DNA of 14,404 nucleotides. Source: Octopus sinensis (lineage: Eukaryota). Location: contig NW_021825709.1 in assembly GCF_006345805.1 (NCBI RefSeq), positions 1-14,404 of the forward strand, written 5' to 3'. Positions 58 through 14,100 of the stretch are shown piece by piece (the stretch's first letter is position 1; each line of letters opens with the position of its first letter). The notes beneath the pieces are model-generated. The model had not been told where the DNA came from, did no database searches, and saw only the letters and a list, made by a program, of their open reading frames with translations. The translations under genes were made by a program, and so were the position numbers.

Positions 58-76
58 ATCTATCTATCTATCTATC

Positions 77-140
<64 letters not shown>

Positions 141-173
141 CCTATCTATCTATCTATCTATCTATCTACCTAC

Positions 174-242
<69 letters not shown>

Positions 243-287
243 CGTCTGTCTGTCTGTCTGTCTGTCTATCTGTCTATCTGTCTGTCT
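58..287. repeat. Compound microsatellite (TATC)n followed by (TGTC)n
   Basis: Read directly; it produces the spurious 12..317 ORF. A short SINE-body remnant (gaaaactgaaagaatcccgtc, 17-37) precedes it. Confidence 0.97.
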
Positions 288-2123: not shown

Positions 2124-2164
<41 letters not shown>

Positions 2165-2330
2165 CGACGGGCTTCTTTCAGTTTCCGTCTACCAAATCCA
2201 CTCACAAGGCTTTTGTCGGTCCGAGGCTATAGTAGAAGACACTCGCCCAAGGTGTCATGCAGTGGGATTGAACCCGGAACCATGTGGTTGGTAAACAAGC
2301 TACTTACCACACAGCCACTCCTGCGCCTAT
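1914..2330 (-). mobile_element. SINE family 1, full length
   Basis: Reverse complement of the 12727-13135 copy, from head (ggcgcaggagtggctgtgtggtaag) to tail (aaacaagtaaaagagt), with internal (TA)n. Confidence 0.92.
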
Positions 2331-2346
2331 ATAGATATATATATAT

Positions 2347-2377
<31 letters not shown>

Positions 2378-2378
<1 letters not shown>

Positions 2379-2544
2379 CGACGGGCTTCTTTCAGTTTCC
2401 GTCTACCAAATCCACTCACAAGGCATTGTCGGTCCGAGGCTATAGTAGAAGACACTTACCCAAGGTGTCACGCAGTGGGACTGAACTCGGAACCATGTGG
2501 TTGGTAAACAAGCTACTTACCACACAGCCACTCCTGCACCTATA
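2378..2544 (-). mobile_element. Tandemly duplicated 5' half of the adjacent SINE
   Basis: Repeats 2164-2330 at a 214-bp period and shares private variants with it. Confidence 0.88.
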
Positions 2545-3313
2545 TGTTTAAAGTTTGTAGGATACGTCAATGTGAATCAACTTTAATATTTTATTAGCAG
2601 CTTTATCGATCGGAGGTCAATTTATCGATCGAAGGTCAATTTAGTACTAACAATGAAGTTTGTTAGTTTATATCCATACTTTTCTCAAAAGACATTCTGA
2701 ATATCTGTTTGACATCGAAATACAAACATAAAAGAAGCCTTTATTAATTCAAAGCCTTAACTCTCTACTTGTTATGGTTGACCGCACTTCATCCAACAAC
2801 ATTAAACATGATATATCCAGGGTAAAAGGCAAAACAAATTAATCGAAAGTTATCGATATATTGCTAAGCTTATAAATACAGTCAACTTGTTTCAAGAGGT
2901 ATTGTTGCGGAGACGGGTGAATAGAAGCGGTCATTGATTGGAAAAGTAACGAAGCTGAGAGTGAAACTGATAGTTTATAAATAATCGTGAAAGCAAAGTA
3001 TTTTGGAAAGAAAGCAACAACAATATAAGACTCCAAGTTTGCGAACGTATTTGAGAAAAGCGAAATAACCTGCGGGCAAATTCTAGAGTCAGAGGGAACG
3101 AAGGTTCAAGGTGTACATCTTTCTTAATAAGAGAGTAAAAAATCTGAAGATATTGTTTTAAGGAGATATCATCTTCTTGAAGCTTGAACTGTGAAATATC
3201 TTAAGTTTATTCTTGAATTGTCGGAACGAAGAGAATAGAAAGGAATAAAAGAAATCCTGTTTATCGAAACTGGAAAAAAAGAAATATTAAAAGGCAGAAG
3301 TTATTGTTTCCAG

Positions 3314-3393
3314 TGAGATATGTCCGGTTGGTCGATTTTTAACTAAAAGTGAAGCTTCCTCAACAAACTCTGTAACAGTCATAAACCTTAAAG
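3314..3393 (+). other. Candidate upstream exon (80 nt) of the PAN-domain gene; 5'UTR or coding
   Basis: Acceptor ttattgtttccag| at 3313 and consensus donor AAG|GTAAGT at 3394. Open in frame with the next exon (EICPVGRFLTKSEASSTNSVTVINLK-G). Also holds an out-of-frame uORF, MSGWSIFN* (3319-3345). Confidence 0.55.
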
Positions 3394-3469
3394 GTAAGTG
3401 AATTAATGATATTAAGAATGAAAAGAGAGATAATTACTAAATTTGTTTTCATAATTCTATGATATGCTA

Positions 3470-3960
3470 CGACTCTAGCAGCTCTTAATAAACTCTCTTC
3501 ACTATTTCCTATAAAGGAGTCTATATCTACTCGAGCAAACCCCACGCAGCCTTCTGCTTATATTAACCCTCTTCCGTCCTTTCTAGGTATGTATAATCTT
3601 GCTATTCTTGCCCTTGGGTGGAGTCCTCCATTCATATTGAATTCCTTCCTAGTTCTTCTGACTACCTTTGCTAATTCAGTTATCCCCAATCTACAAAAGC
3701 TGCTGAGTATCTAAGTAATGATACGACCCGAGTATTTACGGCCTTCGCTAGATTCGAACCATTTATTTTGACATTATTAGCTTCCTCACCCTTCTGATGT
3801 ACTCCTTCTCAATTTTCGTTTTCATTTCTGTAGATAGTACTCTGGCAGATTCTAATACGTCTAGAAACTTATAACTCTCTCTTCCTTTCTATGATTTTTA
3901 TGTCTGGCCATCTGTTAAATGGATGCCTTCGCTGTTGACAACCTGTCTCCGTCTCATGGC
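3470..3960 (-). mobile_element. Decayed R4/Dong-like (RLE-type) non-LTR retrotransposon fragment, RT C-terminal region
   Basis: Manual translation: MRRRQVVNSEGIHLTDGQT*KS*KGRESYKFLDVLE...EMKTKIEKEYIRRVRKLIMSK/NGSNLAKAVNTRVVSLLRYSAAF...RRTRKEFNMNGGLHPRARIARLYIPRKDGRGLI*AEGCV. It has the LHPR..RLY.PRK.GRGL motif typical of this clade, with stops and frameshifts. Confidence 0.85.
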
Positions 3961-3973
3961 TAATATTACACAA

Positions 3974-4399
3974 GGCGGTGAGCTGGCAGAAACGTTATAG
4001 CACGTCGGGCGAAATGCGTAGCCGTATTTCGTCTGCCGTTACGTTCTGAGTTCAAATTCCGCCGAGGTCGACTTTGCCTTTCATCCTTACGGGGTCGATA
4101 AATTAAGTACCAGTTATGCACTGGGGTCGATGTAATCGACTTAATCCCTTTATCTGTGCTTGTTTGTCCCCTCTGTGTTTAGCCCCCCTGTGGGTAGTAA
4201 AGAAATAGGCATTTCGTCTGCCGCTACGTTCTGAGTTGAAAATCCGCCGAGGTCGACTTTGCCTTTCATCCTTTCGGGGTCGATAAATTAAGTATCAGTT
4301 ACGCACTGGCGTCGATGTTATTGACTTAATCCCTTTGTCAGTCCTTGTTTGTCCCCTCTGTGTTTAGGCCCTCTGTGTTTCGCCCCTCTGTGTTTAGCC
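3974..4399 (+). mobile_element. tRNA-derived SINE, family 2 (Meta-domain-like), two tandem body units
   Basis: Head ggcggtgagctggcagaa, B box gagttcaaattcc and Meta-like core gcctttcatcctttcggggtcgataaattaagtaccag. Units start at 4025 and 4210. Ends in three 14-15 nt ccctctgtgtttag-like repeats. Confidence 0.88.
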
Positions 4400-4485
4400 A
4401 GACAAATAGAGAAAGAGACAGAGAGAGATAAATAGACACACATGTATGTATGCTGTATACTTGTTTGCTTGTATATTTTTCAGGA

Positions 4486-4813
4486 ATGGAAACATCAATT
4501 CAATGTCATTTGATTCTCCTGTTGCTGCCAGCTTTGACGCTTCTAGTTTTCGTGACTCCGATGACTGGAGAGTCAGCGAACAGAAATGGTTTATTCAGAA
4601 AAATCTCTTCTTCAAAATGCATAAGTGACCAGAGAATAACAACTGCAAAAACGGTGTCTGTTACAAAATGTTCGATTTGGTGTATTTCACAAGACGAATG
4701 CCAATATTTTAGCTATTGTAAAGGTACATGTCATATGCATGGATTGTGGTACGACAAAGAAATCGAAGATTATGATTGCAACTGTTCATTGTATATTTCG
4801 TTCCCAGAAAACG
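4486..4813 (+). CDS. Exon: signal-peptide-like N-terminus plus PAN/apple-like domain of an uncharacterised extracellular protein
   Basis: Acceptor tattttttcag| at 4483, ATG at 4486, hydrophobic core LILLLLPALTLLVFV, pattern C..CSIWC..EC..FSYC..TC..CNC and donor ACG|GTATGT at 4814 (phase 1). Confidence 0.88.
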
Positions 4814-4875
4814 GTATGTAAATCAGCACTTTCTTGCATAATGTTCTGATTTTGATATATTTTAATCAATAAGAG

Positions 4876-5442
4876 GGCGGCGAGCTGGCAGAATCGTTAG
4901 CACGCCGGGCGAAATGCGTAGCCGTATTTCGTCTGCAGTTACGTTCTGAGTTCAAATTCCGCCGAGGTCGACTTTGCCTTTCATCCTTTCGGGGTCGATT
5001 AAATAAGTACCAGTTACGCACTAGGGTAGATGTAATCGAATTAATCGGTCTGTCTGTCCTTGTTTGTCCCCTCTGTGTTTAGCCCCTTCTGGGTAATAAA
5101 GAAATAGGTATTTCGTCTGCCGTTACATTCTGAGTTGAAATTCCGCCGAGGTCGACTTTACCTTTCATCCTTTCGGGGTCGATTAAATAAGTAACAGTTA
5201 AGCACTGGGGTCGATATGATCGACTTAATCCGTATGTCTGTACTTGTTTGTCCCCTCTGTGTTTAGCCCCTTGTGGGTAGTAAAGAAATAGGTATTTCGT
5301 CTGCCGCTACATTCTGAGTTGAAATTCCGCCGAGGTCGACTTTGCCTTTCATCCTTTCGTGGTTGATAAACTAAGTACCAGTTACGCACTGGGGTCGATA
5401 TAATCGACTTAATCTGTTTGTCTGTCCTTGTTTGTCCTCTCT
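4876..5442 (+). mobile_element. SINE family 2 (Meta-like), three tandem body units, third truncated
   Basis: Head ggcggcgagctggcagaatcg. Units start at 4925, 5109 and 5293 (184-bp period). Confidence 0.9.
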
Positions 5443-5794
5443 GGTAGAATGTGTTTATAAAACATCTTTTTCTCTTGGCTTTATTGAGAAAATTCTATAG
5501 TTTGTAAGATATTTGTTGTTGTTTTTCTTCAATTTCTGCAATTTCAATCAATCAATGACGTCTATTGAGGTGAAAGCATTCTGTGCAGTATGAATATGTC
5601 CCTCGTTTAAGAAACAGATTGGGTTTATTTACATTTGTGAAGAAAAAAAAATACCCTTCCCCTACCCCTAACCCTAACTAACCCTGACCCTAAAACAGAT
5701 AGAAATGCAATAGATCGATACTAGGGTCATAATTATGGGTGACATTTTCATATGACACCGCTAGAAAAAACCGCCGTTCAAACCGAAAAGATCC
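5441..5794. mobile_element. Fragment of a putative TIR DNA transposon/MITE ending ...ccgttcaaaccgaaaagatcc, with internal telomere-like repeats
   Basis: 5710-5794 recurs almost identically at 9266-9351 and both stop at the same GATCC end. Degenerate (CCCTAA)n at about 5660-5694. Confidence 0.55.
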
Positions 5795-6056
5795 GGAAAG
5801 TGAATACTTTACGGCTCTTTTCAATGATGAGTTTTTAAAATTTATTCTGCGAGAGACTGACAGTTATTTTAGTATTTGTACAAAATGAAAGTGAAAGTAA
5901 GTGTAAATATGACCCTGAGAAACAAAAGAAACAAAAGAGACGTTTTTTACCAGTTTGTCCAACACATTTATGTAACTCGTTCCTTCCATTTAAGGGCTAA
6001 CATCTTGTCTATACATTTACATGTAAATTGTTGATCTCTATTTATTGCTGATTCAG

Positions 6057-6148
6057 GTACAAGCTGGCAGGGAATGTTTAAAATGACCGAAAACTCATTT
6101 ACAAGAAGTCTTATTTATTTATACTGTGACAAATTTCCTATGGAAAAG
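6057..6148 (+). CDS. Internal exon (92 nt, phase 1 to 0): (G)TSWQGMFKMTENSFTRSLIYLYCDKFPMEK
   Basis: Acceptor ctctatttattgctgattcag| at 6056 and donor AAG|GTAATG at 6149. Open in the frame required by both neighbouring exons. Confidence 0.75.
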
Positions 6149-6177
6149 GTAATGAATTTTCTGCATTTAATAAACTT

Positions 6178-6282
6178 AGGAGTGGCTGTGTGGTAAGTAG
6201 CTTGCTTACGAACCACATGGTTCCGGTTTCAGTCCCACTGTGTTGCACCTTGGGCAAGTGTCTTCTACTGTAGCCTTGGGCC
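6178..6282 (+). mobile_element. SINE family 1, 5' head only
   Basis: aggagtggctgtgtggtaag...caccttgggcaagtgtcttctactgtagccttgggcc, then an abrupt break. Confidence 0.88.
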
Positions 6283-6304
6283 ACTCCTACACCTATGTTG
6301 ATAG

Positions 6305-6380
6305 TTCTTCTCTTCTTCTTCTTCTTCTTCTTCTTCTTCTTCTTCTTCTTCTTCTTCTTCTTCTTCTTCTCCTCCTCCTA

Positions 6381-6420
<40 letters not shown>

Positions 6421-6440
6421 TTAATATTATTATTATTATT
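6305..6440. repeat. (TTC)n followed by (ATT)n trinucleotide microsatellites
   Basis: Read directly; source of the poly-L/poly-I ORF 6240..6446. Confidence 0.97.
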
Positions 6441-6770
6441 GAGTGAGAGAGCAGTGCATGCCATCAAAGTGGCCCTGGGGTAAAATATATAAAGCCCAGT
6501 ATACCCATCATGACTACCCGTCTGATAAGGGTACATCAGGCACATGCATCACAACCATATGTGCGCGACATGGTGATCTCATATCAAGATAAAACAGCAC
6601 ATCACCTTGCAGGTGGGGCCCAGTCAGGATTTTCTTCTGGTCGAGTAACCAATCCCTCTCAAACGGTCCCTGAATAAGGGTTGTTTAAAGATGTTGAACG
6701 AATCCATGTTTCCAGAGGTGAATTATTCAATCCCCAAATAATCCCTCTCAATACATGGCTATGACCGTCA
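6381..6770 (-). mobile_element. Probable 3' end/UTR of a non-LTR retroelement with a (TAA)n tail
   Basis: A GC-richer non-coding block abuts a long (AAT)n tract with 3'-tail geometry. It resembles an interspersed octopus repeat from memory; single copy in this window. Confidence 0.4.
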
Positions 6771-6821
6771 CAATGACTAGAGGGTACAATGTTTAGTGGC
6801 TTTTAGTTACAGATTTTCACT

Positions 6822-6884
6822 TTCTGAGTTCAAGTTCCGTCGAGGTTTCCTTTGATTTACATCATTCTAGGGACGATAAAATAA
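6822..6884 (+). mobile_element. Degenerate Meta-like SINE remnant
   Basis: ttctgagttcaagttccgtcgagg...ggacgataaaataa aligns by eye to the family 2 B box and core. Confidence 0.6.
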
Positions 6885-7387
6885 CATGACAAACGTCATC
6901 AGATCGTAGTGAGAGGATTTCATAGACGTCAACATAACTAAGTGTGTTTGGAGATTGAATCGGTGTCTTGACCAGGAATACTTTTAGGTTTCAAAGGAGA
7001 CTGAACAAATGAATCAGAATATCGAATGATTCGTTCTTGTCATCGGTACGTTGGTGTAGGAAGACCGCAAGAGTTGAAAGGGATTGTGAGCATGGGAACT
7101 AATAAAAAGGCGATTTAAGGAGGAATTTGAAGAGCTGAAGTTGGATCGATTATGAATAAATATCTTGAAGTAGAACAACATGGGGTTTTATCTGTTAGGA
7201 TTGAAATAAGAATGGTGAGTGTTTATAAGTGTATAGGGTTGAGTAAACATGAGTTGGAGGAAGACGGAGAGAGATTATGAGAAGGTTCTGCGTCGGGAAG
7301 CAAAGCTGTTTGTCTTAAAGTCTGAAAGGAAGAGGTGGAAGGATGAAGTTTAGGTCGAAATTTGCAAATATGTAGATACTCTCTCTC

Positions 7388-7418
<31 letters not shown>

Positions 7419-7422
<4 letters not shown>

Positions 7423-7825
7423 TTTATCTTTTACTTGCTTCAGTCATTTGACTGCGGCCATGCTGGAGCACCACCTTTAATCGAGCAAATCGACCTCAGG
7501 ACGTATTCTTTGTAAGCCCAGTACTTATTCTATCGGTCTCTTTTTGCCGAACCGCTAAGTTACGGAGAAATAAACACACCAGCATCGGTTGTCAAGCGAT
7601 GGTGGGGGGGGGCAAACATAGACACACAAACATATACTCCCAAATACACATATATATATATATACGACAGGCTTCTTTCAGTTTCCGTCTACCAAATCCA
7701 CTCACTAGGCATTGGTCGGACCGAGGCTATAGCAGAAGACACTTGCCCAAGGTGCCACGCGGTGGGACTGAACCCGGAACCGTGTGGTTGGTAAGCAAGC
7801 TAATCACCACACAGCCACTCCTGCG
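7419..7825 (-). mobile_element. SINE family 1, near full length
   Basis: Homologous to 1914-2330. Its tail merges with (CT)n at 7380-7421. Confidence 0.9.
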
Positions 7826-8249
7826 GGACGGTAAAAACAAGAATGCTGTTCCCTCGACACGAACTTGAGAACAGGGTATATAGTAACACCCCACCAGGGC
7901 CAAAAGAACATGATGGACATACCTACACGTGTACCTACCCCCAACACCTACAATCCTTCTGGCATCTGCTTCCTACGTCCGTTCATCTCAGATAAAAAAA
8001 ACGGGTTGTTTGAAAGCCCCGTTTCTTGACGTCATCTCACTTCTCTTTTACTTCCGGTTCAGATGTCTCCCTTCATTTCTCCACAGGACATCAATGTGAC
8101 ATTGATGTGGGATTGATTCTTGCTATTTTTATCTTTTGTTTTTGTTTTTCTTCTGATTTTGTCAGGGTCTTCTACTTCCCACAAATGCAACGAAACTTTT
8201 GCAAAGACTCCGAAATCATAACTCCTTGGCCCTTAATCCGATTCTCTGT

Positions 8250-8530
8250 CTTATGAGTTACCCATCTTTTCCTCCTAAACCCCAAATCTTTCTCTCCTCT
8301 CTCTTAGCTTTGCCTTTCTAACGCTACATTGCATTTCGCTTCTTCTTCTCTCTCTCTCTCCTCCTCCTCCTCTCTCTTGTCTTCTCTAGTCTTTTTCTCT
8401 TGCACTCAAGTCTTACTCTTTCCCCCACTGTCCTCTCCATCTCCTTCTCGCCCTCCTACTCTCTCCTTATATCACATCGTAGTCTCCTTTCTCTTCCTAC
8501 AACTCTGTCCTCCCTCACTCTCTCATATTC
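8250..8530 (+). repeat. Extended low-complexity pyrimidine (CT-rich) tract
   Basis: About 280 nt of mostly C/T immediately upstream of the 8562 acceptor. Confidence 0.85.
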
Positions 8531-8562
8531 GTTACTGATCCGAGTTTATGTTCTATTTCCAG

Positions 8563-8733
8563 AAGGAATTTCGGTTGGAAATAGGAATTGGTCATATTAT
8601 AACTTTCAATGGAACAGGGATGAATTCTACATCGTGGCTGCATAATGAGAAAATCCTTTCTAATTCATATCCGGATTGGAAAAATCTGAAATTTACTTTC
8701 AATAAGAAGTATAAACAAACTCCTTATTCATAA
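8563..8733 (+). CDS. Exon: KEFRLEIGIGHIITFNGTGMNSTSWLHNEKILSNSYPDWKNLKFTFNK(KYKQTPYS*)
   Basis: Acceptor ttctatttccag| at 8562 (tandem CAGAAG), phase 0 matching the previous exon, non-repetitive protein-like composition. Ends at TAA 8731-8733 or splices at AA|GTATAA (8709). Confidence 0.75.
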   Translation, partial: KEFRLEIGIGHIITFNGTGMNSTSWLHNEKILSNSYPDWKNLKFTFNKKYKQTPYS

Positions 8734-8794
8734 TTAACACCTTCAACTAATTGTTCCATAAGTAATTCTTTTGAACACTTTCACTGTGTGTATA

Positions 8795-9029
8795 TAATTT
8801 AATTCAATTTTTATTGGCTCAAAGAGCAAAAGCAAGGCCATGTAGGGGGACAGGGAGTTATGTACAGGGAGGGTGGTCATACAAAGAGTTCAGGTCATTT
8901 CTGGTCAAGAGAGACTTTGAACCGAGCAGTCGTCGGCATCTTCACTATCTCGTCCGACAGCTTTTTCCACGGATCCACAACCCGGACGGAAAAGGCCCCT
9001 CTCCTTCGATTGAGATGAAATCGTCGTAG
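8795..9029 (-). mobile_element. 5'-truncated CR1-like LINE 3' end
   Basis: Minus translation LRRFHLNRRRGAFSVRVVDPWKKLSDEIVKMPTTARFKVSLDQK*PELFV* fits the CR1 ORF2 C-terminal FS.RVV..W..L...V....FK..LD motif. A short 3'UTR and aataaaaattgaattaaatta tail follow. Confidence 0.85.
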
Positions 9030-9180
9030 ATAGAGCTTTTCGGAGTGACCCCGCAGCCCACGTTAACTTTACAGATATACTTTATATCCCATTGTTGTAT
9101 AATATTATAGTTCCATAATAATAATCATTTCTTCCATAGGCAGAACGTCTGATAGTTTGTTGGGGGCGGGGGGGGGGGTT

Positions 9181-9265
9181 AGTCGATTGCATCAGTAACA
9201 GTGACAACTGGTAATTATTTCAACGATCCCCCACATATGTAAAAGACAAAATCGATTTCGGCAAT
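9181..9265 (-). mobile_element. Degenerate Meta-like SINE remnant
   Basis: agtcgattgcatc...aactggtaattattt...aaaagacaaaatcgatttcggc resembles the reverse-strand family 2 core. Confidence 0.55.
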
Positions 9266-9351
9266 ATAGATCGATACTAGGGTCATAATTATGGGTGACA
9301 ATTTCATATGACACCGCTAGAAAAAAACTGCCGTTCAAACCGAAAAGATCC
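9266..9351. mobile_element. Second copy of the GATCC-ended putative TIR element terminus
   Basis: Near-identical to 5710-5794. Confidence 0.6.
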
Positions 9352-9369
9352 CAAATTGTATATAAAACA

Positions 9370-9663
9370 CTAGCAGTATCGCCCGGCGTTACTCGGGTTT
9401 GTAAGGGAAATAACTATATAAGCATTTTTAGAGAGTTACTTCCCTTATATAAACCGAGCAAAAAATGCATTAAAAATGCAAAAAATTTTTTTTTTAATCG
9501 TAGACTCATCGTAGAAGCGCACTAATACCCAGAAGGGCTCGATATGAATCACGGCTATAAGATACCCGTTTTTGGTTAAACTGCACCGCAAAATGTAGGA
9601 GTAGTTAGGAATCTAATTCAGAGGAGACAGAGTCTCACACAGCTTCATTTTTATATATAAAGA
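9370..9663 (-). mobile_element. Non-autonomous Helitron (294 bp)
   Basis: A|TC start (9663-9662), CTAG|T end (9373-9370) and hairpin cccggcgttactcggg (9382-9397). Confidence 0.88.
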
Positions 9664-10110
9664 TTAATATCAGAGATGAAATTATAAACTCATTGATTTA
9701 ATTAAACTGAACCGATTATTGTAAATTAAGTCGTAAAAATGTTTTCTTTATGTTTAAGTTAATTAAATTAATCAATTGTAATATATTAGTTTCAGTTACC
9801 CGTACTTTAGCGCCGAGTTTGATAACAATTGGACGTTAGAAGCCTATAGAGAAAGTGGAAACGTCGAAAAGTACGATATTCCTATGAAAGATCCATCCGG
9901 GAGTAAGTAAAATATATCTTCTTACCTTCAATGCAAGTGATTGTATAATTCCCTCTGTGTGTATTTGTGTGTTTGTGTTTGCGTGCGCGCGAGCACCGGT
10001 TGTTTTCAAAAAGCATTGTCTCATACATAAATACATAAAACATAAATATTTTAGAGTGGTTGTATACTGTCAACTTAACGTGACAGTCCTGTAAGGGAAT
10101 TACACCACTG

Positions 10111-10154
10111 CTGTTTAGCCCTAGGAAGCATGTCGATGCTTCCTAGGGCTAAAC

Positions 10155-10156
<2 letters not shown>
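10111..10156. repeat. Perfect inverted repeat: 21-bp stem, 4-nt loop
   Basis: ctgtttagccctaggaagcat-gtcg-atgcttcctagggctaaacag; the arms are exact reverse complements. Confidence 0.97.
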
Positions 10157-10251
<95 letters not shown>

Positions 10252-10266
10252 TAGATAGATAGATAG
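10156..10266. repeat. (GATA)n microsatellite
   Basis: Read directly. Confidence 0.97.
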
Positions 10267-10471
10267 CGTAAATCTTTCTATCCATCTCTTTCCATATTCT
10301 TCAAGTGGCGATTAGAATTCGTTTCGGAAGCGAGGTAAGTTAACGGTACTGATGAGCAGAAATAACTACGAAATATCGATATCTGTTGTACACGTTCACT
10401 TTCGGAACAATTTCGTTTCGCTTAGTTTTCAAGTATACCGTGTCTTTTAATATTATATATATTTAAATGGA

Positions 10472-10720
10472 TTTAGAGTGCTACTTCCCTTATATAAACC
10501 GAGCAAAAATGCATTAAAAATGCGACAAAATTATGGTAAATTTTTTTCTCATCGTAGACTCATCGTAGACGCACGCTAATACCAAAAAGGGCTCGATATG
10601 AATCATGACTATAAGATACCCGCTTTTGGTTAAACTGCACCGCAAAATGTGGAAATAGTTAGGAATCTAAATCGGAGGAGACAGACTCTCACACACACAA
10701 CTTCAGTTTTATATATAAAG

Positions 10721-10721
<1 letters not shown>
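10472..10721 (-). mobile_element. Helitron copy lacking its 3' hairpin/CTAG end
   Basis: Colinear with about 9428-9663, keeps the A|TC 5' end, and homology stops near 10472. Confidence 0.85.
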
Positions 10722-10764
<43 letters not shown>

Positions 10765-10877
10765 CATACATATTCATATTCAAATATAGATAGATAGAGA
10801 ATGAGAGAGAGATACGCGTGTGGGCATTGAGTTAATTTAATAAATTTTTAACGAATCTATCCTTTCGTGTTTTTCAG

Positions 10878-10971
10878 ATGTGCAATGGCGTTACCCACAA
10901 CTGGTCTTCTCAGTACTTTTAAAATAGAATACATATACAATTCCAGAAATTACATAATTTTACATACATAA
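10878..10971 (+). CDS. Possible terminal exon: (K)[30 protein letters not shown]
   Basis: Good acceptor cctttcgtgtttttcag| at 10877. Open in phase 2, matching the weak donor at 8709, with stop at 10969-10971. No other support. Confidence 0.35.
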
Positions 10972-10996
10972 ATACATACATACATACGTACGTACA

Positions 10997-11027
<31 letters not shown>

Positions 11028-11300
11028 GTTAGTACATGCATATCTACACACATGCATATTTTTACATACATACATATGTAAGTACATACATAATCATATT
11101 CATGTAGATAGATAGATACAGAGAGACAGAGAGAGAGAATTAGATAGAAAGAATTGATAGATAGATAGAGAGAGAGGGATGTGTATATATATATATACGT
11201 ATATATAGATAGAGAGAGAGGGATGTGTATATATATATATACGTATATATATAGATATATGTGTGTATATATATATATATATAGATAGATATATATATAT

Positions 11301-11378
<78 letters not shown>
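10960..11378. repeat. Compound (TACA)n, (GA)n and (TA)n microsatellite field with a 44-bp local duplication (11164/11208)
   Basis: Read directly; source of the YI-repeat ORFs. Confidence 0.93.
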
Positions 11379-11381
<3 letters not shown>

Positions 11382-11919
11382 GTTTAAATATTTGTTGTGC
11401 AAGATTTTTTATGTGAAGTCGTGTGTTGAAACAGATATTGTTATATTTCGGAATGGTCATATTGCCAGTTAGCCAATAAAAACACACGCACTATATATTT
11501 GGTGTTATTTTGCTTCAGTGATATTTATTTTTTACATTAATCTTAATCTTATTTCGGCCAAAGCTCTTTCGTCACACTCCTGTGACCGCATCAGTGGTCC
11601 TTTATTTTCTTCTCACTTATTTGTGTCTCTCCTTACTAACCGTCAGCCATTTTGTATTTCTATTGTATGTCTTCATTTGCGCATGCTTATATCTCTATGT
11701 GCGTCTATGTTTATTTAGTGTGTGTGTGGGGGGATGCCTGTAATATTTGTATCTTCTGTTTATATACATTCTTGTAATTTGTATTTTGTTTTTGTTGTTG
11801 TTGCTTTTGTTCTAATTTTGTTCATGTGTTTACATCCACCCATTATTATCAGTACATATGCTTGTATGTATGTATAACAACAATATTAGTAATAATAATA
11901 ATAAATCTAATCGAAAAAA

Positions 11920-12300
11920 AAAATATGAGCACGCAAAGGAAGAAAAGCAGAAGTATCCAGATACAATAAATGGAATTATTATGGAAGATGTGTTACTACC
12001 AGAAGAGTTCAATAAAGACAATGAAGCGAACATCTATGGGGGAGTAACAACGGACCCAGATGAAATATCGATACTTCAACTACCACCAAAGTATGCAGTG
12101 TATAGTAAGGTGAATACCATCAAATGCCTGTCTGAGATTGAAAAGTCGTTCACAAAAATACGTTGGAATTTAAATAGATACAATGACAACAACACTTGCG
12201 ACAACAACAACAACGCGAAAAACACTAACCGCAGCAACACTGTTAACTCTCTGGCACGTTCAACAAAATTCTAAAGAGGGCGCTTCAGTCTATTTCACAT
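11920..12300 (+). mobile_element. Probable Penelope-like retroelement fragment (N-terminal pre-RT region)
   Basis: 12032-12166 encodes IYGGVTTDPDEISILQLPPKYAVYSKVNTIKCLSEIEKSFTKIRW, resembling the E..L.L.PKF/Y...EIE....K.RW stretch of Penelope-like ORFs. No splice signals or RT domain follow. Confidence 0.5.
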
Positions 12301-12726
12301 TATGAAAAAGATATCTTGCTAAATTTTTTACTTCAGAGATTATCCTTCCTCAGTATATATTGTTCTTTAACTCAGAAATGCAAGATATTTCACCCCACCG
12401 CCACCCAAAGTCCATACACACACACACACACACATTCACATATTTTTCGGTCATGTATTTAATATGCTTTCTGTGGTGCACGAATGGGAAACACTCCGCG
12501 ACGCACGAATGTAATATATTCGAATGAAATATTTCCGAATTGAATATCTCAAAGAGTAACTATTCTTTCTGGTTACTTTACTCTTCTACTCTTTTCTCTG
12601 TAACCCAGTTATACTTTTTATTGTTGTAAAATAAAACATTTTTATCTGAAAAAAAAGGTTCGTCTGTCATATTTCTAAAATATTTCCCGTTCTTCTTTAT
12701 ATCAACATCAACATATAACATTTATA

Positions 12727-13135
12727 GGCGCAGGAGTGGCAGTGTGGTAAGTAGCTTGCTAACCAACCACATGGTTCCGGGTTCAGTCCCACTGCGTGCG
12801 TCTTGGGCAAGTGTCTTCTGCTATAGCCCCGGGCCGACCAATGCCTTGTGAGTGGATTTGGTAGAGGGAAACTGAAAGAAGCCTCTCGTATATATGTATA
12901 TATGTATATGTGTGTGTTTGTGTGTCTGTGTTTGCCCCCCTAGCATTGCTTGACAACCGATGCTGGTGTGTTTACGTCCCCGTGACTTAGCGGTTCGGCA
13001 AAAGAGACCGATAGATTAAATACTGGGCTTACAAAGAATAAGTTCCGTGGTCGATTTGCTCGACTAAAGGCGGTGCTCCAGCATGGCCGCAGTCAAATGA
13101 CTGAAACAAGTAAAAGAGTAAAAGAGTAAAGAGTA
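12727..13135 (+). mobile_element. SINE family 1, full length
   Basis: ggcgcaggagtggcagtgtggtaag head, ggttcagtccc B box, internal (TA/TG)n and (gtaaaaga)n tail. Confidence 0.92.
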
Positions 13136-13502: not shown

Positions 13503-14100
13503 ATTTCTTTATTGCCCACAAGGGGTTAAACATAGAGGGGACAAGCAAGGACAGACAAACGGATTAAGTCGATTACATCGACCCCAGTGCGTAACTGGCA
13601 TTTTATTAATCGACCCCGAAAGGATGAAAGGCAAAGTCGACCTCGGCGGAATTTGAACTCAGACCGTAGCGGCAGACGAAATACCTATTTCTTTACTACC
13701 CACAAGGGGCTAAACATAGAGCGGACAAACAAGGACAGACAAACGGATTAAGTCGATTACATCGACCCCAGTGCGTAACTGGCACTTTATTTGTCGACCC
13801 CGAATGGATGAAAGGCAAAGTCGACCTCGGCGGAATTTGAATTCAGAACATAGCGGCAGACGAAATGCCTATTTCTTTACTACCCACAAGGAGCTAAACA
13901 TAGAGAGGACAAACAAGGAAAGACAAACGGATTAAGCCGATTACATCGACCCAAGTGCGTAACTGGCACTTTATTTGTCGACCCCGAATGGATGAAAGGC
14001 AAAGTCGACCTCGGCGGAATTTGAACTCAGAACGTAACGGCAGACGAAATACGGCTACGCATTTCGTCCGGCGTGCTAACGTTTCTGCCAGCTCGCCGCC
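13503..14100 (-). mobile_element. SINE family 2 (Meta-like), three complete tandem units
   Basis: Head at 14100. The cagacgaaat anchor occurs at 13673, 13857 and 14041 (184-bp period). Confidence 0.92.

What the first reader, a model, noticed from the sequence alone, without database searches (positions are those of the whole stretch)
3314..10971. Hidden multi-exon gene for a secreted PAN/apple-like protein with an unnamed second domain
Seen: exons 4484-4813, 6057-6148 and 8563- have canonical splice sites and join without a stop (phases 1, 0). The product is METSIQCHLILLLLPALTLLVFVTPMTG-ES..., an 8-Cys module, then a domain with SWQGMFK, FRLEI...ITFNGTG..STSW...KILSNSYPDW, and four N-glycosylation sequons (NCS, NGT formed across a splice junction, NGT, NST). 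Established: PAN/apple domains mediate protein-protein and protein-carbohydrate binding in extracellular proteins. Inference: the second domain resembles, from memory only, an uncharacterised domain found after PAN modules in molluscan secreted proteins, so this may be a lineage-expanded lectin-, immune- or venom-gland-type factor.
Basis: partly seen in the sequence, partly recalled or inferred. Interest (0 to 1): 0.75.

Follow-up and report, generated by a model that had tools for sequence, protein, structure and literature searches.

The report
Octopus secreted PAN plus fibrinogen-like gene
This is a real five-exon octopus gene for a small secreted glycoprotein, with a PAN/apple module joined to a stripped-down fibrinogen-like domain; it belongs to a large, fast-evolving, uncharacterised family that so far appears only in Octopus.

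Summary
The true CDS has five exons (4486-4813, 6057-6148, 8563-8708, 9790-9902, 10878-10927) and encodes 242 aa rather than 196. Exon lengths and splice sites are identical in O. sinensis and O. bimaculoides, and NCBI's O. bimaculoides model (XP_014785803.1, 242 aa) uses the same five exons. The window sequence alone fails the Pfam PAN models. The PAN/apple call holds at family level through paralogue Pfam hits, profile hits to PAN-repeat proteins and the fold of a long-form relative.

The second domain has no confident Pfam name. Profile comparison (hhalign 98.9%, E 1e-17) links it to a longer domain found in sponge, corals, starfish, amphioxus and octopods. Coral and sponge members carry a recognisable fibrinogen/COLFI A-subdomain in front of that domain. 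An AlphaFold model of a long-form octopus relative (pLDDT 81) weakly matches fibrinogen-related domains. Domain 2 therefore looks like a reduced fibrinogen-related (FReD-like) domain with no A-subdomain.

dN/dS is 0.2 in the PAN module and about 0.85 in domain 2. The family is tandemly expanded, with about 30 short-form clusters, all from Octopus. Function is untested; a lectin-like recognition role is inferred. Interest is moderate.

The parts
3314..3393 (+). Conserved upstream (5'UTR) exon with acceptor ...tttccag| and donor |gtaagt. It splices to 4484. O. sinensis paralogue models start here with ATG-AAC-CTT-AAA-G (MNLKG); the window has ATA.
   Evidence: 97.7% identical to L001 8023-8153
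4484..4813 (+). Coding exon 1 (ATG at 4486). It encodes the signal-like peptide (aa 1-28, 4486-4569) and the 8-Cys PAN/apple module (C45-C100, about 4618-4785). It ends in phase 1 with donor gtatgt.
6057..6148 (+). Coding exon 2 (92 nt). It starts domain 2 with (N)GTSWQGMFKMTENSFTRSLIYLYCDKFPMEK. The SWQGMFK strand corresponds to the 'GGWTMVFK' strand of fibrinogen-related domains.
8563..8708 (+). Coding exon 3 (146 nt). It holds the most conserved core of domain 2 (EFRL..ITFNGTGMNSTSW..).
9790..9902 (+). Coding exon 4 (113 nt): (N)FSYPYFSAEFDNNWTLEAYRESGNVEKYDIPMKDPSG.
   Evidence: (100% aa identity to O. sinensis)
10878..10927 (+). Coding exon 5 (50 nt, including the TAG stop): (N)[15 protein letters not shown], the last beta-strand of domain 2.
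3998..5454 (.). Arrays of a ~184-bp SINE-like tandem repeat bracket exon 1 (3998-4372 upstream, 4898-5454 in intron 1). They are not part of the gene product.

Best explanation
The interval holds an intact, conserved octopus gene with one 5'UTR exon and five coding exons. It encodes a 242-aa precursor. The precursor has three parts: a cleavable-looking signal peptide (aa 1-28), a PAN/apple module with 8 Cys (aa ~40-105), and a 133-aa all-beta domain (aa 110-242).

The all-beta domain is a shortened, highly diverged relative of the fibrinogen-related/COLFI superfamily. It starts at the strand equivalent to FReD 'GGWTVIQ'. It lacks the A-subdomain; PAN sits in that position. It also lacks the Cys-bounded loop of the long form.

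The mature product would be a secreted glycoprotein of ~25 kDa before glycans. It carries up to six sequons, two of which (NGT and NST in FNGTGxNSTSW) are nearly family-wide.

The gene belongs to a tandemly duplicated, fast-evolving family that so far appears only in Octopus.

My inference, which is not shown, is that it acts outside the cell as a binding or recognition protein. The PAN module would be the constrained anchor, and the FReD-like domain the rapidly diversifying surface. This would be analogous to the fibrinogen-related lectins (FREPs) of other invertebrates.
For: Gene reality:
- Splice sites and frame are correct.
- Exon lengths and splice sites are identical in O. sinensis and O. 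bimaculoides.
- The translation of the mapped O. bimaculoides exons equals NCBI's 242-aa model P0001, as read.
- The ORF is intact in three species, with P = 0.0057 under random substitution.
- PAN-module dN/dS is 0.20-0.28, Fisher p = 2.6e-4.

Signal peptide: a 15-residue hydrophobic core (mean Kyte-Doolittle 3.0) after a short polar N-terminus, with a conserved G at -1.

PAN/apple:
- The family profile hits PAN-repeat proteins over aa ~50-90 (P0031 at E 1e-12, and others), and these hits are PAN_1/PAN_4 by Pfam.
- 10 of 21 family members hit PAN_1 or PAN_4, and P0065 (28.7 bits) and P0033 (25 bits) exceed the PAN_1 cut-off of 21.4.
- UniRef names the orthologue 'Apple domain-containing protein'.
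- The model of long-form relative P0068 matches the HGF N-domain with Foldseek probability 1.0.

Domain 2:
- hhalign of the short-form family against long-form domains gives 97.7% and 98.9%, E 2e-12 and 1.4e-17.
- The multiple alignment is collinear end to end.
- Coral, sponge and metagenome long-form members carry 'C..DGVYWI..FPVYCDM..GGWTMVFK' directly upstream. Pfam scores this as COLFI (26.6 bits against a cut-off of 26.2) and Fibrinogen_C (22.1 against 22).
- A profile of those members finds 52 PDB sequences. All are fibrinogen-related domains or intelectin-1, with a best E of 2.7e-4.
- The AF2 model of P0068 has pLDDT 81.
- About 40 of the top 50 Foldseek PDB hits are fibrinogen, ficolin, MFAP4, FGL1 or ANGPTL domains.

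Expansion:
- About 30 short-form representatives, and every one looked up is from Octopus.
- Paralogues lie next to the gene in both O. sinensis loci and in O. bimaculoides.
Against: - The window protein itself passes no Pfam model.
- The AF2 model of its orthologue was unusable (pLDDT 38), so every fold statement comes from a paralogue that pairwise BLAST cannot link to it (E 0.5).
- Foldseek matches to fibrinogen domains are weak: E 0.02-0.14, TM about 0.3, none at E <= 1e-3.
- Sequence matches to FReD cover only the A-subdomain plus one strand. The A-subdomain is absent from the octopus proteins.
- Domain 2 dN/dS is 0.82-0.86 and not distinguishable from 1. Window against O. sinensis shows 17 non-synonymous and 4 synonymous changes. 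This fits relaxed constraint as well as diversifying selection.
- There is no transcript evidence, tissue data or literature.
Confidence: 0.6

Rival explanations
1. The locus is a decaying or functionless recent duplicate (an expressed or unexpressed pseudogene in the making) within a tandem array. Its open frame is a short-term survivor.
For: - dN/dS is about 1 between the window and O. sinensis (17 non-synonymous, 4 synonymous), and 0.82-0.86 in domain 2 against O. bimaculoides.
- The chromosome-level O. sinensis copy (L003) is collinear only up to window ~7581 and has no exons 3-5 in the stretch read. Its gene model ends in a reverse-transcriptase fragment.
- Many family models are truncated.
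Against: - The ORF, exon lengths and all ten splice sites are intact in three species, at dS about 0.22 from O. bimaculoides. Random substitution keeps the ORF open in only 0.57% of trials.
- The PAN module is under significant purifying selection (p = 2.6e-4).
- Motifs in domain 2 are invariant across paralogues that are only 25-55% identical.
Confidence: 0.1
2. Exon 3 is the terminal exon, read through the weak gtataa donor to the stop at 8733, giving a 196-aa protein with a truncated second domain.
For: The donor AA|gtataa is weak. The read-through frame is open for eight more codons before TAA. The same read-through peptide (KKYKQTPY) is possible in O. sinensis.
Against: - Exons 4 and 5 are present, in frame and conserved in all three species (exon 4 is 100% aa identical to O. 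sinensis).
- NCBI models in two species use the gtataa donor.
- The C-terminal strand encoded by exon 5 aligns with the last strand of every family member and of the long-form domain.
- Read-through would remove about four predicted core strands.
Confidence: 0.07
3. Domain 2 and its long-form relatives are a separate, new beta-fold. This fold merely sits next to a fibrinogen-type A-subdomain in corals and sponge, and the resemblance to FReD is superficial.
For: - No Foldseek hit at E <= 1e-3, and TM about 0.3.
- The profile of the domain alone finds no fibrinogen chain in PDB sequences.
- Pfam Fibrinogen_C and COLFI matches stop at profile positions ~65 and ~88.
- There is a weak Pfam DUF7922 signal on an amphioxus member.
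Against: - In FReDs the A-subdomain never stands alone. Here the match runs through the 'GGWT-hydrophobic' strand, which is the first strand of the octopus domain.
- About 40 of the top 50 structural neighbours are FReDs, and the rest are explained by the PAN module.
- The intelectin-1 alignment continues past that strand.
Confidence: 0.2
4. It is a venom or salivary-gland toxin, or another specialised secretion component (sucker, skin mucus, egg coat), rather than an immune-type recognition protein.
For: It is small, secreted, Cys-rich, glycosylated, taxon-restricted, tandemly expanded and fast-evolving. These traits are shared by venom and other secretory-product families.
Against: No tissue data of any kind were available and no similarity to a known toxin was found. 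This rival differs from the best explanation only in where the protein is deployed.
Confidence: 0.2

Closest known systems
Octopus bimaculoides LOC106880400 (XP_014785803.1; UniRef A0A0L8FY73, 'Apple domain-containing protein') and O. sinensis LOC118761643 (XP_036355631.1)
   Same: These are orthologues. The window is collinear with the O. sinensis locus; with O. bimaculoides only the exon regions and their flanks align. All three have the same five coding exons of identical length. The O. bimaculoides protein is 242 aa and 79% identical. The O. sinensis model is 96% identical over its 176 aa.
   Different: The window is from a different, closely related genome: 92-96% nucleotide identity to O. 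sinensis and 17 amino-acid differences. The O. sinensis model is N-terminally truncated. None of these proteins has been characterised.
Long-form octopod 'PAN + domain' proteins (for example O. sinensis LOC118768580, XP_036371248.1, 293 aa; also Argonauta hians)
   Same: They have the same architecture: signal peptide, PAN-like module, then the homologous C-terminal domain (hhalign 98.9%). They are also massively expanded in octopods.
   Different: The long form keeps a helix and loop after the first strand, and the 'FYINRNxGGCxxDxGWL...CxWE' disulfide loop. The window's short form has lost both, making it about 45 residues shorter. Pairwise similarity is not significant.
Fibrinogen-related domain proteins (Pfam Fibrinogen_C PF00147: ficolins, angiopoietins, MFAP4, FIBCD1, tachylectin-5A, molluscan FREPs) and the fibrillar-collagen C-propeptide domain (COLFI PF01410)
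   Same: Coral and sponge members of the long-form family start with a bona fide A-subdomain followed by the GGWT strand. The structural neighbours of the modelled domain are FReDs. From established knowledge of FREPs, they are also secreted, lineage-expanded and fused to variable N-terminal modules.
   Different: The window protein has no A-subdomain and no match to either Pfam model. The Ca2+ and acetyl-binding residues of the P-subdomain were not identifiable. The domain is about 133 aa, against about 220.
PAN/apple modules (HGF and plasminogen N-domains, factor XI and prekallikrein apple domains, nematode and apicomplexan PAN proteins)
   Same: The Cys spacing C..C...C.....C..F.Y......C matches, with an outer Cys pair. 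Paralogues pass PAN_1. The family profile finds PAN repeats. The fold of the relative matches the HGF N-domain.
   Different: It has 8 Cys rather than 4-6. The extra pair, C78 and C100, is lost together in paralogues. The window sequence itself is below every Pfam PAN threshold.
Pfam DUF7922 (PF25538)
   Same: An amphioxus ZP protein with four copies of the long-form domain scores 32 bits summed (cut-off 25) over the 'ELIFDGTNTDKFTWFSKSRL' hairpin.
   Different: No single repeat passes on its own. No octopus member and no other long-form protein tested hits it. I do not treat this as membership.

Membership tests
PAN/apple domain (Pfam PAN_1 PF00024, PAN_4 PF14295) | Profile-HMM match above the curated threshold | tested here: not met
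   The window protein gives PAN_4 at 9.1 bits (cut-off 27, E 1.8) and no PAN_1 hit. Paralogues do pass PAN_1: P0065 at 28.7 bits and P0033 at 25 bits, against a cut-off of 21.4. 10 of 21 family members hit at E <= 1.
PAN/apple domain (Pfam PAN_1 PF00024, PAN_4 PF14295) | Homology to PAN domains detectable with a family profile | tested here: met
   The profile of the octopus family hits multi-PAN proteins over aa ~50-90 (P0031 at E 1.2e-12 with 13 stretches; also P0035, P0036, P0040, P0041). Pfam confirms these as PAN_1/PAN_4.
PAN/apple domain (Pfam PAN_1 PF00024, PAN_4 PF14295) | Conserved cysteine framework (core C-C pairs plus an outer apple pair) | tested here: met
   C45, C62, C66, C72, C82 and C98 are conserved across family members with PAN-like spacing. 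The extra C78 and C100 co-vary. Disulfide connectivity itself cannot be tested here.
PAN/apple domain (Pfam PAN_1 PF00024, PAN_4 PF14295) | PAN fold (helix packed on a curved antiparallel sheet) | tested here: inconclusive
   The orthologue model is unusable (pLDDT 38). The long-form relative P0068 models with helix 62-71 plus five strands and matches HGF NK1 with Foldseek probability 1.0.
Fibrinogen-related domain (Pfam Fibrinogen_C PF00147) / COLFI PF01410 | Profile-HMM match above threshold | tested here: not met
   There is no hit for the window protein or any octopus member. Only coral and metagenome long-form relatives reach threshold, and only over the A-subdomain (P0082 COLFI 26.6 against 26.2; P0076 Fibrinogen_C 22.1 against 22).
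Fibrinogen-related domain (Pfam Fibrinogen_C PF00147) / COLFI PF01410 | N-terminal A-subdomain with the C...YCDM motif | tested here: not met
   It is absent from the window protein, where domain 2 starts at SWQGMFK directly after PAN.
Fibrinogen-related domain (Pfam Fibrinogen_C PF00147) / COLFI PF01410 | B/P-subdomain fold | tested here: inconclusive
   Foldseek of the P0068 model gives about 40 FReD chains in the top 50, but at E 0.02-0.14 and TM about 0.3. A domain-only search was not possible with the tools.
Fibrinogen-related domain (Pfam Fibrinogen_C PF00147) / COLFI PF01410 | Ca2+ site and acetyl-group binding pocket in the P-subdomain | not tested
   No reliable residue-level alignment to a FReD P-subdomain was obtained.
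Long-form 'FYINRN-GC' domain family (unnamed; sponge to amphioxus to octopods) | Profile-profile homology over the conserved core (LPIxKVK ... FxGxG....WF...L.S.PW ... F.I) | tested here: met
   hhalign gives 97.7% (E 2e-12) and 98.9% (E 1.4e-17). The MAFFT alignment is collinear from the first W to the last strand.
Long-form 'FYINRN-GC' domain family (unnamed; sponge to amphioxus to octopods) | Cys-bounded loop 'C..D.GWL......C.WE' | tested here: not met
   This loop is deleted in the window protein and in all short-form paralogues.
Pfam DUF7922 (PF25538) | Profile-HMM match | tested here: not met
   The only signal is a summed 32-bit score on amphioxus P0032, with no single stretch passing. 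There is nothing for the octopus proteins.

The most novel reading that the evidence does not exclude
Octopus evolved its own diversified repertoire of secreted recognition proteins. It took an ancient fibrinogen-superfamily domain, replaced the A-subdomain with a PAN module, pruned the domain to a ~130-aa glycosylated beta core, and amplified it in tandem arrays under diversifying selection. This would be a cephalopod counterpart of snail FREPs, built on a previously unrecognised minimal FReD-like fold.
Probability: 0.2. Interest if true: 0.6.

Novelty: new variant of a known kind. Interest (0 to 1): 0.4.

Why it matters
Cephalopods lack adaptive immunity, and their taxon-restricted secreted gene families are largely unstudied. 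This gene is a clean example of such a family. It shows that a domain left unnamed in databases is probably a pared-down fibrinogen-related module with roots in sponges and corals.

If the family proves to be a recognition repertoire, or a component of a specialised secretion, it would give a concrete entry point into octopus innate immunity or surface biology. It would also be a natural experiment in how far a FReD-type fold can be reduced.

On the practical side, the work corrects the gene model (242 aa rather than 196). It also flags faulty O. sinensis annotations: one model is N-terminally truncated and one is fused to a reverse-transcriptase fragment.

Tried and rejected
I used orthologue P0001 instead.
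- AlphaFold of P0001 with a 7-sequence alignment was unusable (pLDDT 38). I therefore modelled the long-form relative P0068 with 81 sequences.
- DUF7922 was considered as the identity of domain 2. It was rejected as unsupported beyond one summed weak score.
- A profile of the long-form domain alone against PDB sequences gave only chance hits to YTH and PARP15.
- Pairwise BLASTP of the window protein against P0068 was not significant.
- Literature searches for DUF7922, the LOC identifiers, 'apple domain' or 'PAN domain' with octopus or cephalopod, and fibrinogen-related expansions in octopus found nothing on this family.
- Rfam found nothing in the window.
- The 138-aa ORF at 11858-12274 and two intronic ORFs have no Pfam match.
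- No paralogous exons of this family lie elsewhere in the window.

Full report
**1. Observation**

The window is AT-rich (GC about 0.27-0.45), repeat-laden animal DNA. Exon 1 starts at 4484, with the ATG at 4486, and ends at 4813|gtatgt. Exon 2 is cag|6057-6148|gtaatg. Exon 3 starts at ccag|8563. They join in phases 1 and 0 without a stop and give exactly the peptide strings quoted.

Homologues show this is read-through into an intron. Exon 3 ends at 8708 (AA|gtataa). It is followed by exon 4 (ttag|9790-9902|gtaagt) and exon 5 (tcag|10878-10927, ending in TAG). The corrected CDS is 729 nt and encodes 242 aa.

O. sinensis gene models use it to begin with MNLKG. In the window the corresponding codon is ATA, so translation starts at METSIQ.

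**2. Is it a real gene?**

A search of 5.8 billion proteins found seven relatives, all from Octopus. The best full-length hit is O. bimaculoides LOC106880400 (242 aa; 79% identical when aligned to the corrected 242-aa model). UniRef names it 'Apple domain-containing protein'. The O. sinensis model LOC118761643 is 96% identical to the corrected model over its 176 aa.

I fetched both genomic loci. The window is collinear with the O. sinensis contig at 92-96% nucleotide identity. With O. bimaculoides, only the exon regions and their flanks align, at 84-90%. The window therefore comes from a close relative of O. sinensis; I cannot name the species.

The five coding exons have identical lengths (328/92/146/113/50) and retain all splice sites in the three genomes, including the weak gtataa donor. 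As far as I can see by eye, the translation of the mapped O. bimaculoides exons equals NCBI's 242-aa model, so an independent annotation uses the same structure.

The ORF is intact in all three species. With the 93 nucleotide differences from O. bimaculoides placed at random, it stays open in only 0.57% of 20,000 simulations.

Nei-Gojobori dN/dS against O. bimaculoides:

| Region | dN/dS | Note |
|---|---|---|
| Whole CDS | 0.52 | dS 0.23; Fisher p = 0.011 |
| PAN part (aa 29-109) | 0.20 | Fisher p = 2.6e-4 |
| Domain 2 (aa 110-242) | 0.86 | not different from 1 |

Between the window and O. sinensis there are 17 non-synonymous and 4 synonymous differences.

The gene is therefore real and constrained, but its C-terminal domain evolves very fast. 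A pseudogene reading is unlikely. It is not excluded for individual copies: the chromosome-level O. sinensis copy shows no exons 3-5 in the stretch read, and its gene model ends in a reverse-transcriptase fragment.

**3. The N-terminal half**

Residues 1-28 have the layout of a signal peptide. A short polar start is followed by a 15-residue hydrophobic core (mean hydropathy 3.0), then TPMTG|ES with a family-conserved G at -1. This is inference, since no signal-peptide predictor was available.

The next ~65 residues carry eight Cys (45, 62, 66, 72, 78, 82, 98, 100). The window sequence alone does not pass Pfam (PAN_4 9.1 bits against 27). The family does:

- 10 of 21 members hit PAN_1 or PAN_4.
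- Two relatives exceed the PAN_1 cut-off.
- The family profile finds multi-PAN proteins at E down to 1e-12 over exactly this stretch.

C78 and C100 are lost together in paralogues, which suggests an extra disulfide beyond the PAN framework.

**4. The second domain**

No Pfam family matches it in any short-form member. An exhaustive profile search found two amphioxus multidomain proteins matching aa ~125-180. Iterating from these recovered 73 proteins with a longer (~180 aa) version of the domain. They include:

- a second large octopod expansion (Octopus species and Argonauta hians), again placed behind a PAN-like module;
- amphioxus proteins in which the domain is combined with kringle, C-type lectin, EGF or ZP modules;
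- proteins from corals (Acropora, Montipora), a starfish (Patiria) and a sponge (Oscarella).

All are 'uncharacterized' in their sources. Profile-profile comparison of the short-form family with long-form domains gives 97.7% (E 2e-12) and 98.9% (E 1.4e-17). A multiple alignment is collinear from the first W..F strand to the last strand.

Relative to the long form, the window's domain lacks a helix and loop after strand 1. It also lacks the Cys-bounded loop 'NRNxGGCxxDxGWL...CxWE'.

**5. What fold is it?**

Coral, sponge and metagenome members start with 'C..DGVYWI....FPVYCDM..GGWTMVFK'. Pfam scores this as COLFI (26.6 bits, cut-off 26.2) and Fibrinogen_C (22.1, cut-off 22), covering profile positions 3-65 of 221. 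That span is the A-subdomain plus the first strand of the B-subdomain.

A profile of those members finds 52 PDB sequences at E <= 1. Every one is a fibrinogen-related domain or intelectin-1: MFAP4 at 2.7e-4, then fibrinogen beta and gamma, FGL1, tenascins, FIBCD1, angiopoietins, ficolin-3 and tachylectin-5A. The strand 'GGWTMVFK' aligns with SWQGMFKM of the window protein.

An AlphaFold model of the long-form octopus protein P0068, built with 81 sequences, is good (pLDDT 81.4, pTM 0.71). Its Foldseek neighbours in the PDB fall into two groups. The first is PAN-bearing proteins: fungal copper oxidases at E 3e-3 and HGF NK1 at probability 1.0. The second is about 40 fibrinogen-type domains, at E 0.02-0.14 and TM about 0.3.

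These structural matches are weak, and I could not search the domain alone. I therefore rate 'reduced FReD/COLFI-like domain without an A-subdomain' as likely (about 0.75) but not proven. The weak DUF7922 signal on one amphioxus protein is not supported elsewhere.

**6. How it probably works**

What is shown: the architecture, conservation across species, tandem expansion and an uneven selection pattern.

What is inferred: the product is a secreted glycoprotein of about 25 kDa before glycans. It has six sequons, and the pair in FNGTGxNSTSW is almost family-wide. It would act outside the cell by binding. The PAN module would be the constrained part and the FReD-like domain the diversifying surface. 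This is how fibrinogen-related lectins behave in other invertebrates, from established knowledge of FREPs, ficolins and tachylectins.

In the window's orthologue group, the otherwise invariant Trp of 'IYLYWD' is replaced by Cys133. That gives an odd Cys count in the mature protein and a possible free thiol for covalent dimerisation.

The site of deployment is unknown. It could be immune, mucus or skin, sucker, egg coat or salivary. No paper in the searchable library mentions the family.

**7. Family and genomic context**

About 30 short-form clusters (at the 50% identity level) were found. Every one I looked up is from O. bimaculoides, O. sinensis or O. vulgaris. Paralogues lie next to the gene in other genomes: inverted downstream in O. 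bimaculoides (LOC106880398) and on the O. sinensis contig, and in tandem on the O. sinensis chromosome scaffold. None lies in the window.

**8. Verdict**

The gene is an orthologue of already predicted but uncharacterised Octopus genes.

The added value here has three parts. The first is the corrected model. The second is the placement of the unnamed domain as a pruned member of an ancient FReD/COLFI-like family. The third is the contrast in selection between the two modules. I rate it as a new variant of a known kind, of moderate interest.

Noticed in passing
window 3998-4372, 4898-5454 (+) and 13503-14054 (inverted): Tandem arrays (2-3 copies each) of a ~184-bp SINE-like unit (…GGCGAGCTGGCAGAA…TTCGTCTGCCG…GGGTCGA…). 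They bracket coding exon 1 and recur inverted ~8 kb downstream, with arms up to 589 nt at 89% complementarity. Rfam finds no tRNA or other family in them.
   Followed up: partly
window 2127-2545, 7664-7825, 317-519 (inverted), 12720-13130: A second dispersed repeat family (unit ~213 bp, often next to TA/TG microsatellites). Copies lie upstream of the gene, in intron 2 and downstream. There are many copies in the O. sinensis and O. bimaculoides loci too.
   Followed up: partly
window 9484-9641 and 10538-10695; also 5700-5800 vs 9268-9350: Introns 3 and 4 each hold a copy of the same ~158-bp element (89% identical) on either side of exon 4. By eye, another short element (…GATCGATACTAGGGTCATAATTATGGGTGACA…) is shared by introns 1 and 3.
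   Followed up: no
window 58-287, 6305-6440, 10155-10266, 10961-11377: Long microsatellites: (ATCT)58; (TTC)22 followed by (ATT)20 in intron 2; (AGAT)28 in intron 4; and TACA/TA tracts just after the stop codon.
   Followed up: no
window 11858-12274 (+): The longest ORF in the window (138 aa, Asn-rich, containing …IYGGVTTDPDEISILQLPPKYAVYSKV…) lies ~1 kb downstream of the gene. It has no Pfam match. The region is collinear with O. sinensis at ~96% identity. It may be a transposon remnant, but this is unresolved.
   Followed up: partly
L003 (O. sinensis CM016885.1) 10001-25610; L001 (VCDQ01005269.1): O. sinensis has two near-identical versions of this gene's 5' half. The chromosome copy loses collinearity after window ~7581 and shows no exons 3-5 in the stretch read, and its NCBI model (XP LOC118768099) ends in an RVT_1 fragment. 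The unplaced contig carries all five exons but its model is N-terminally truncated. These could be assembly or haplotig artefacts, or a real partial duplicate.
   Followed up: partly
L001 3314-3443 and 8023-8153; L003 4722-4853 and 9924-10040: The upstream (5'UTR) exon occurs twice about 5 kb apart in both O. sinensis loci. All copies except the L001 copy nearest the gene (8023-8153) read ATGAACC (MNLKG start); that copy and the window read ATAAACC.
   Followed up: partly
window 6123-6125 (codon 133, in exon 2): Cys133 replaces a Trp that is invariant in all paralogues outside this orthologue group (IYLYWD to IYLYCD). The mature protein therefore has nine Cys.
   Followed up: partly
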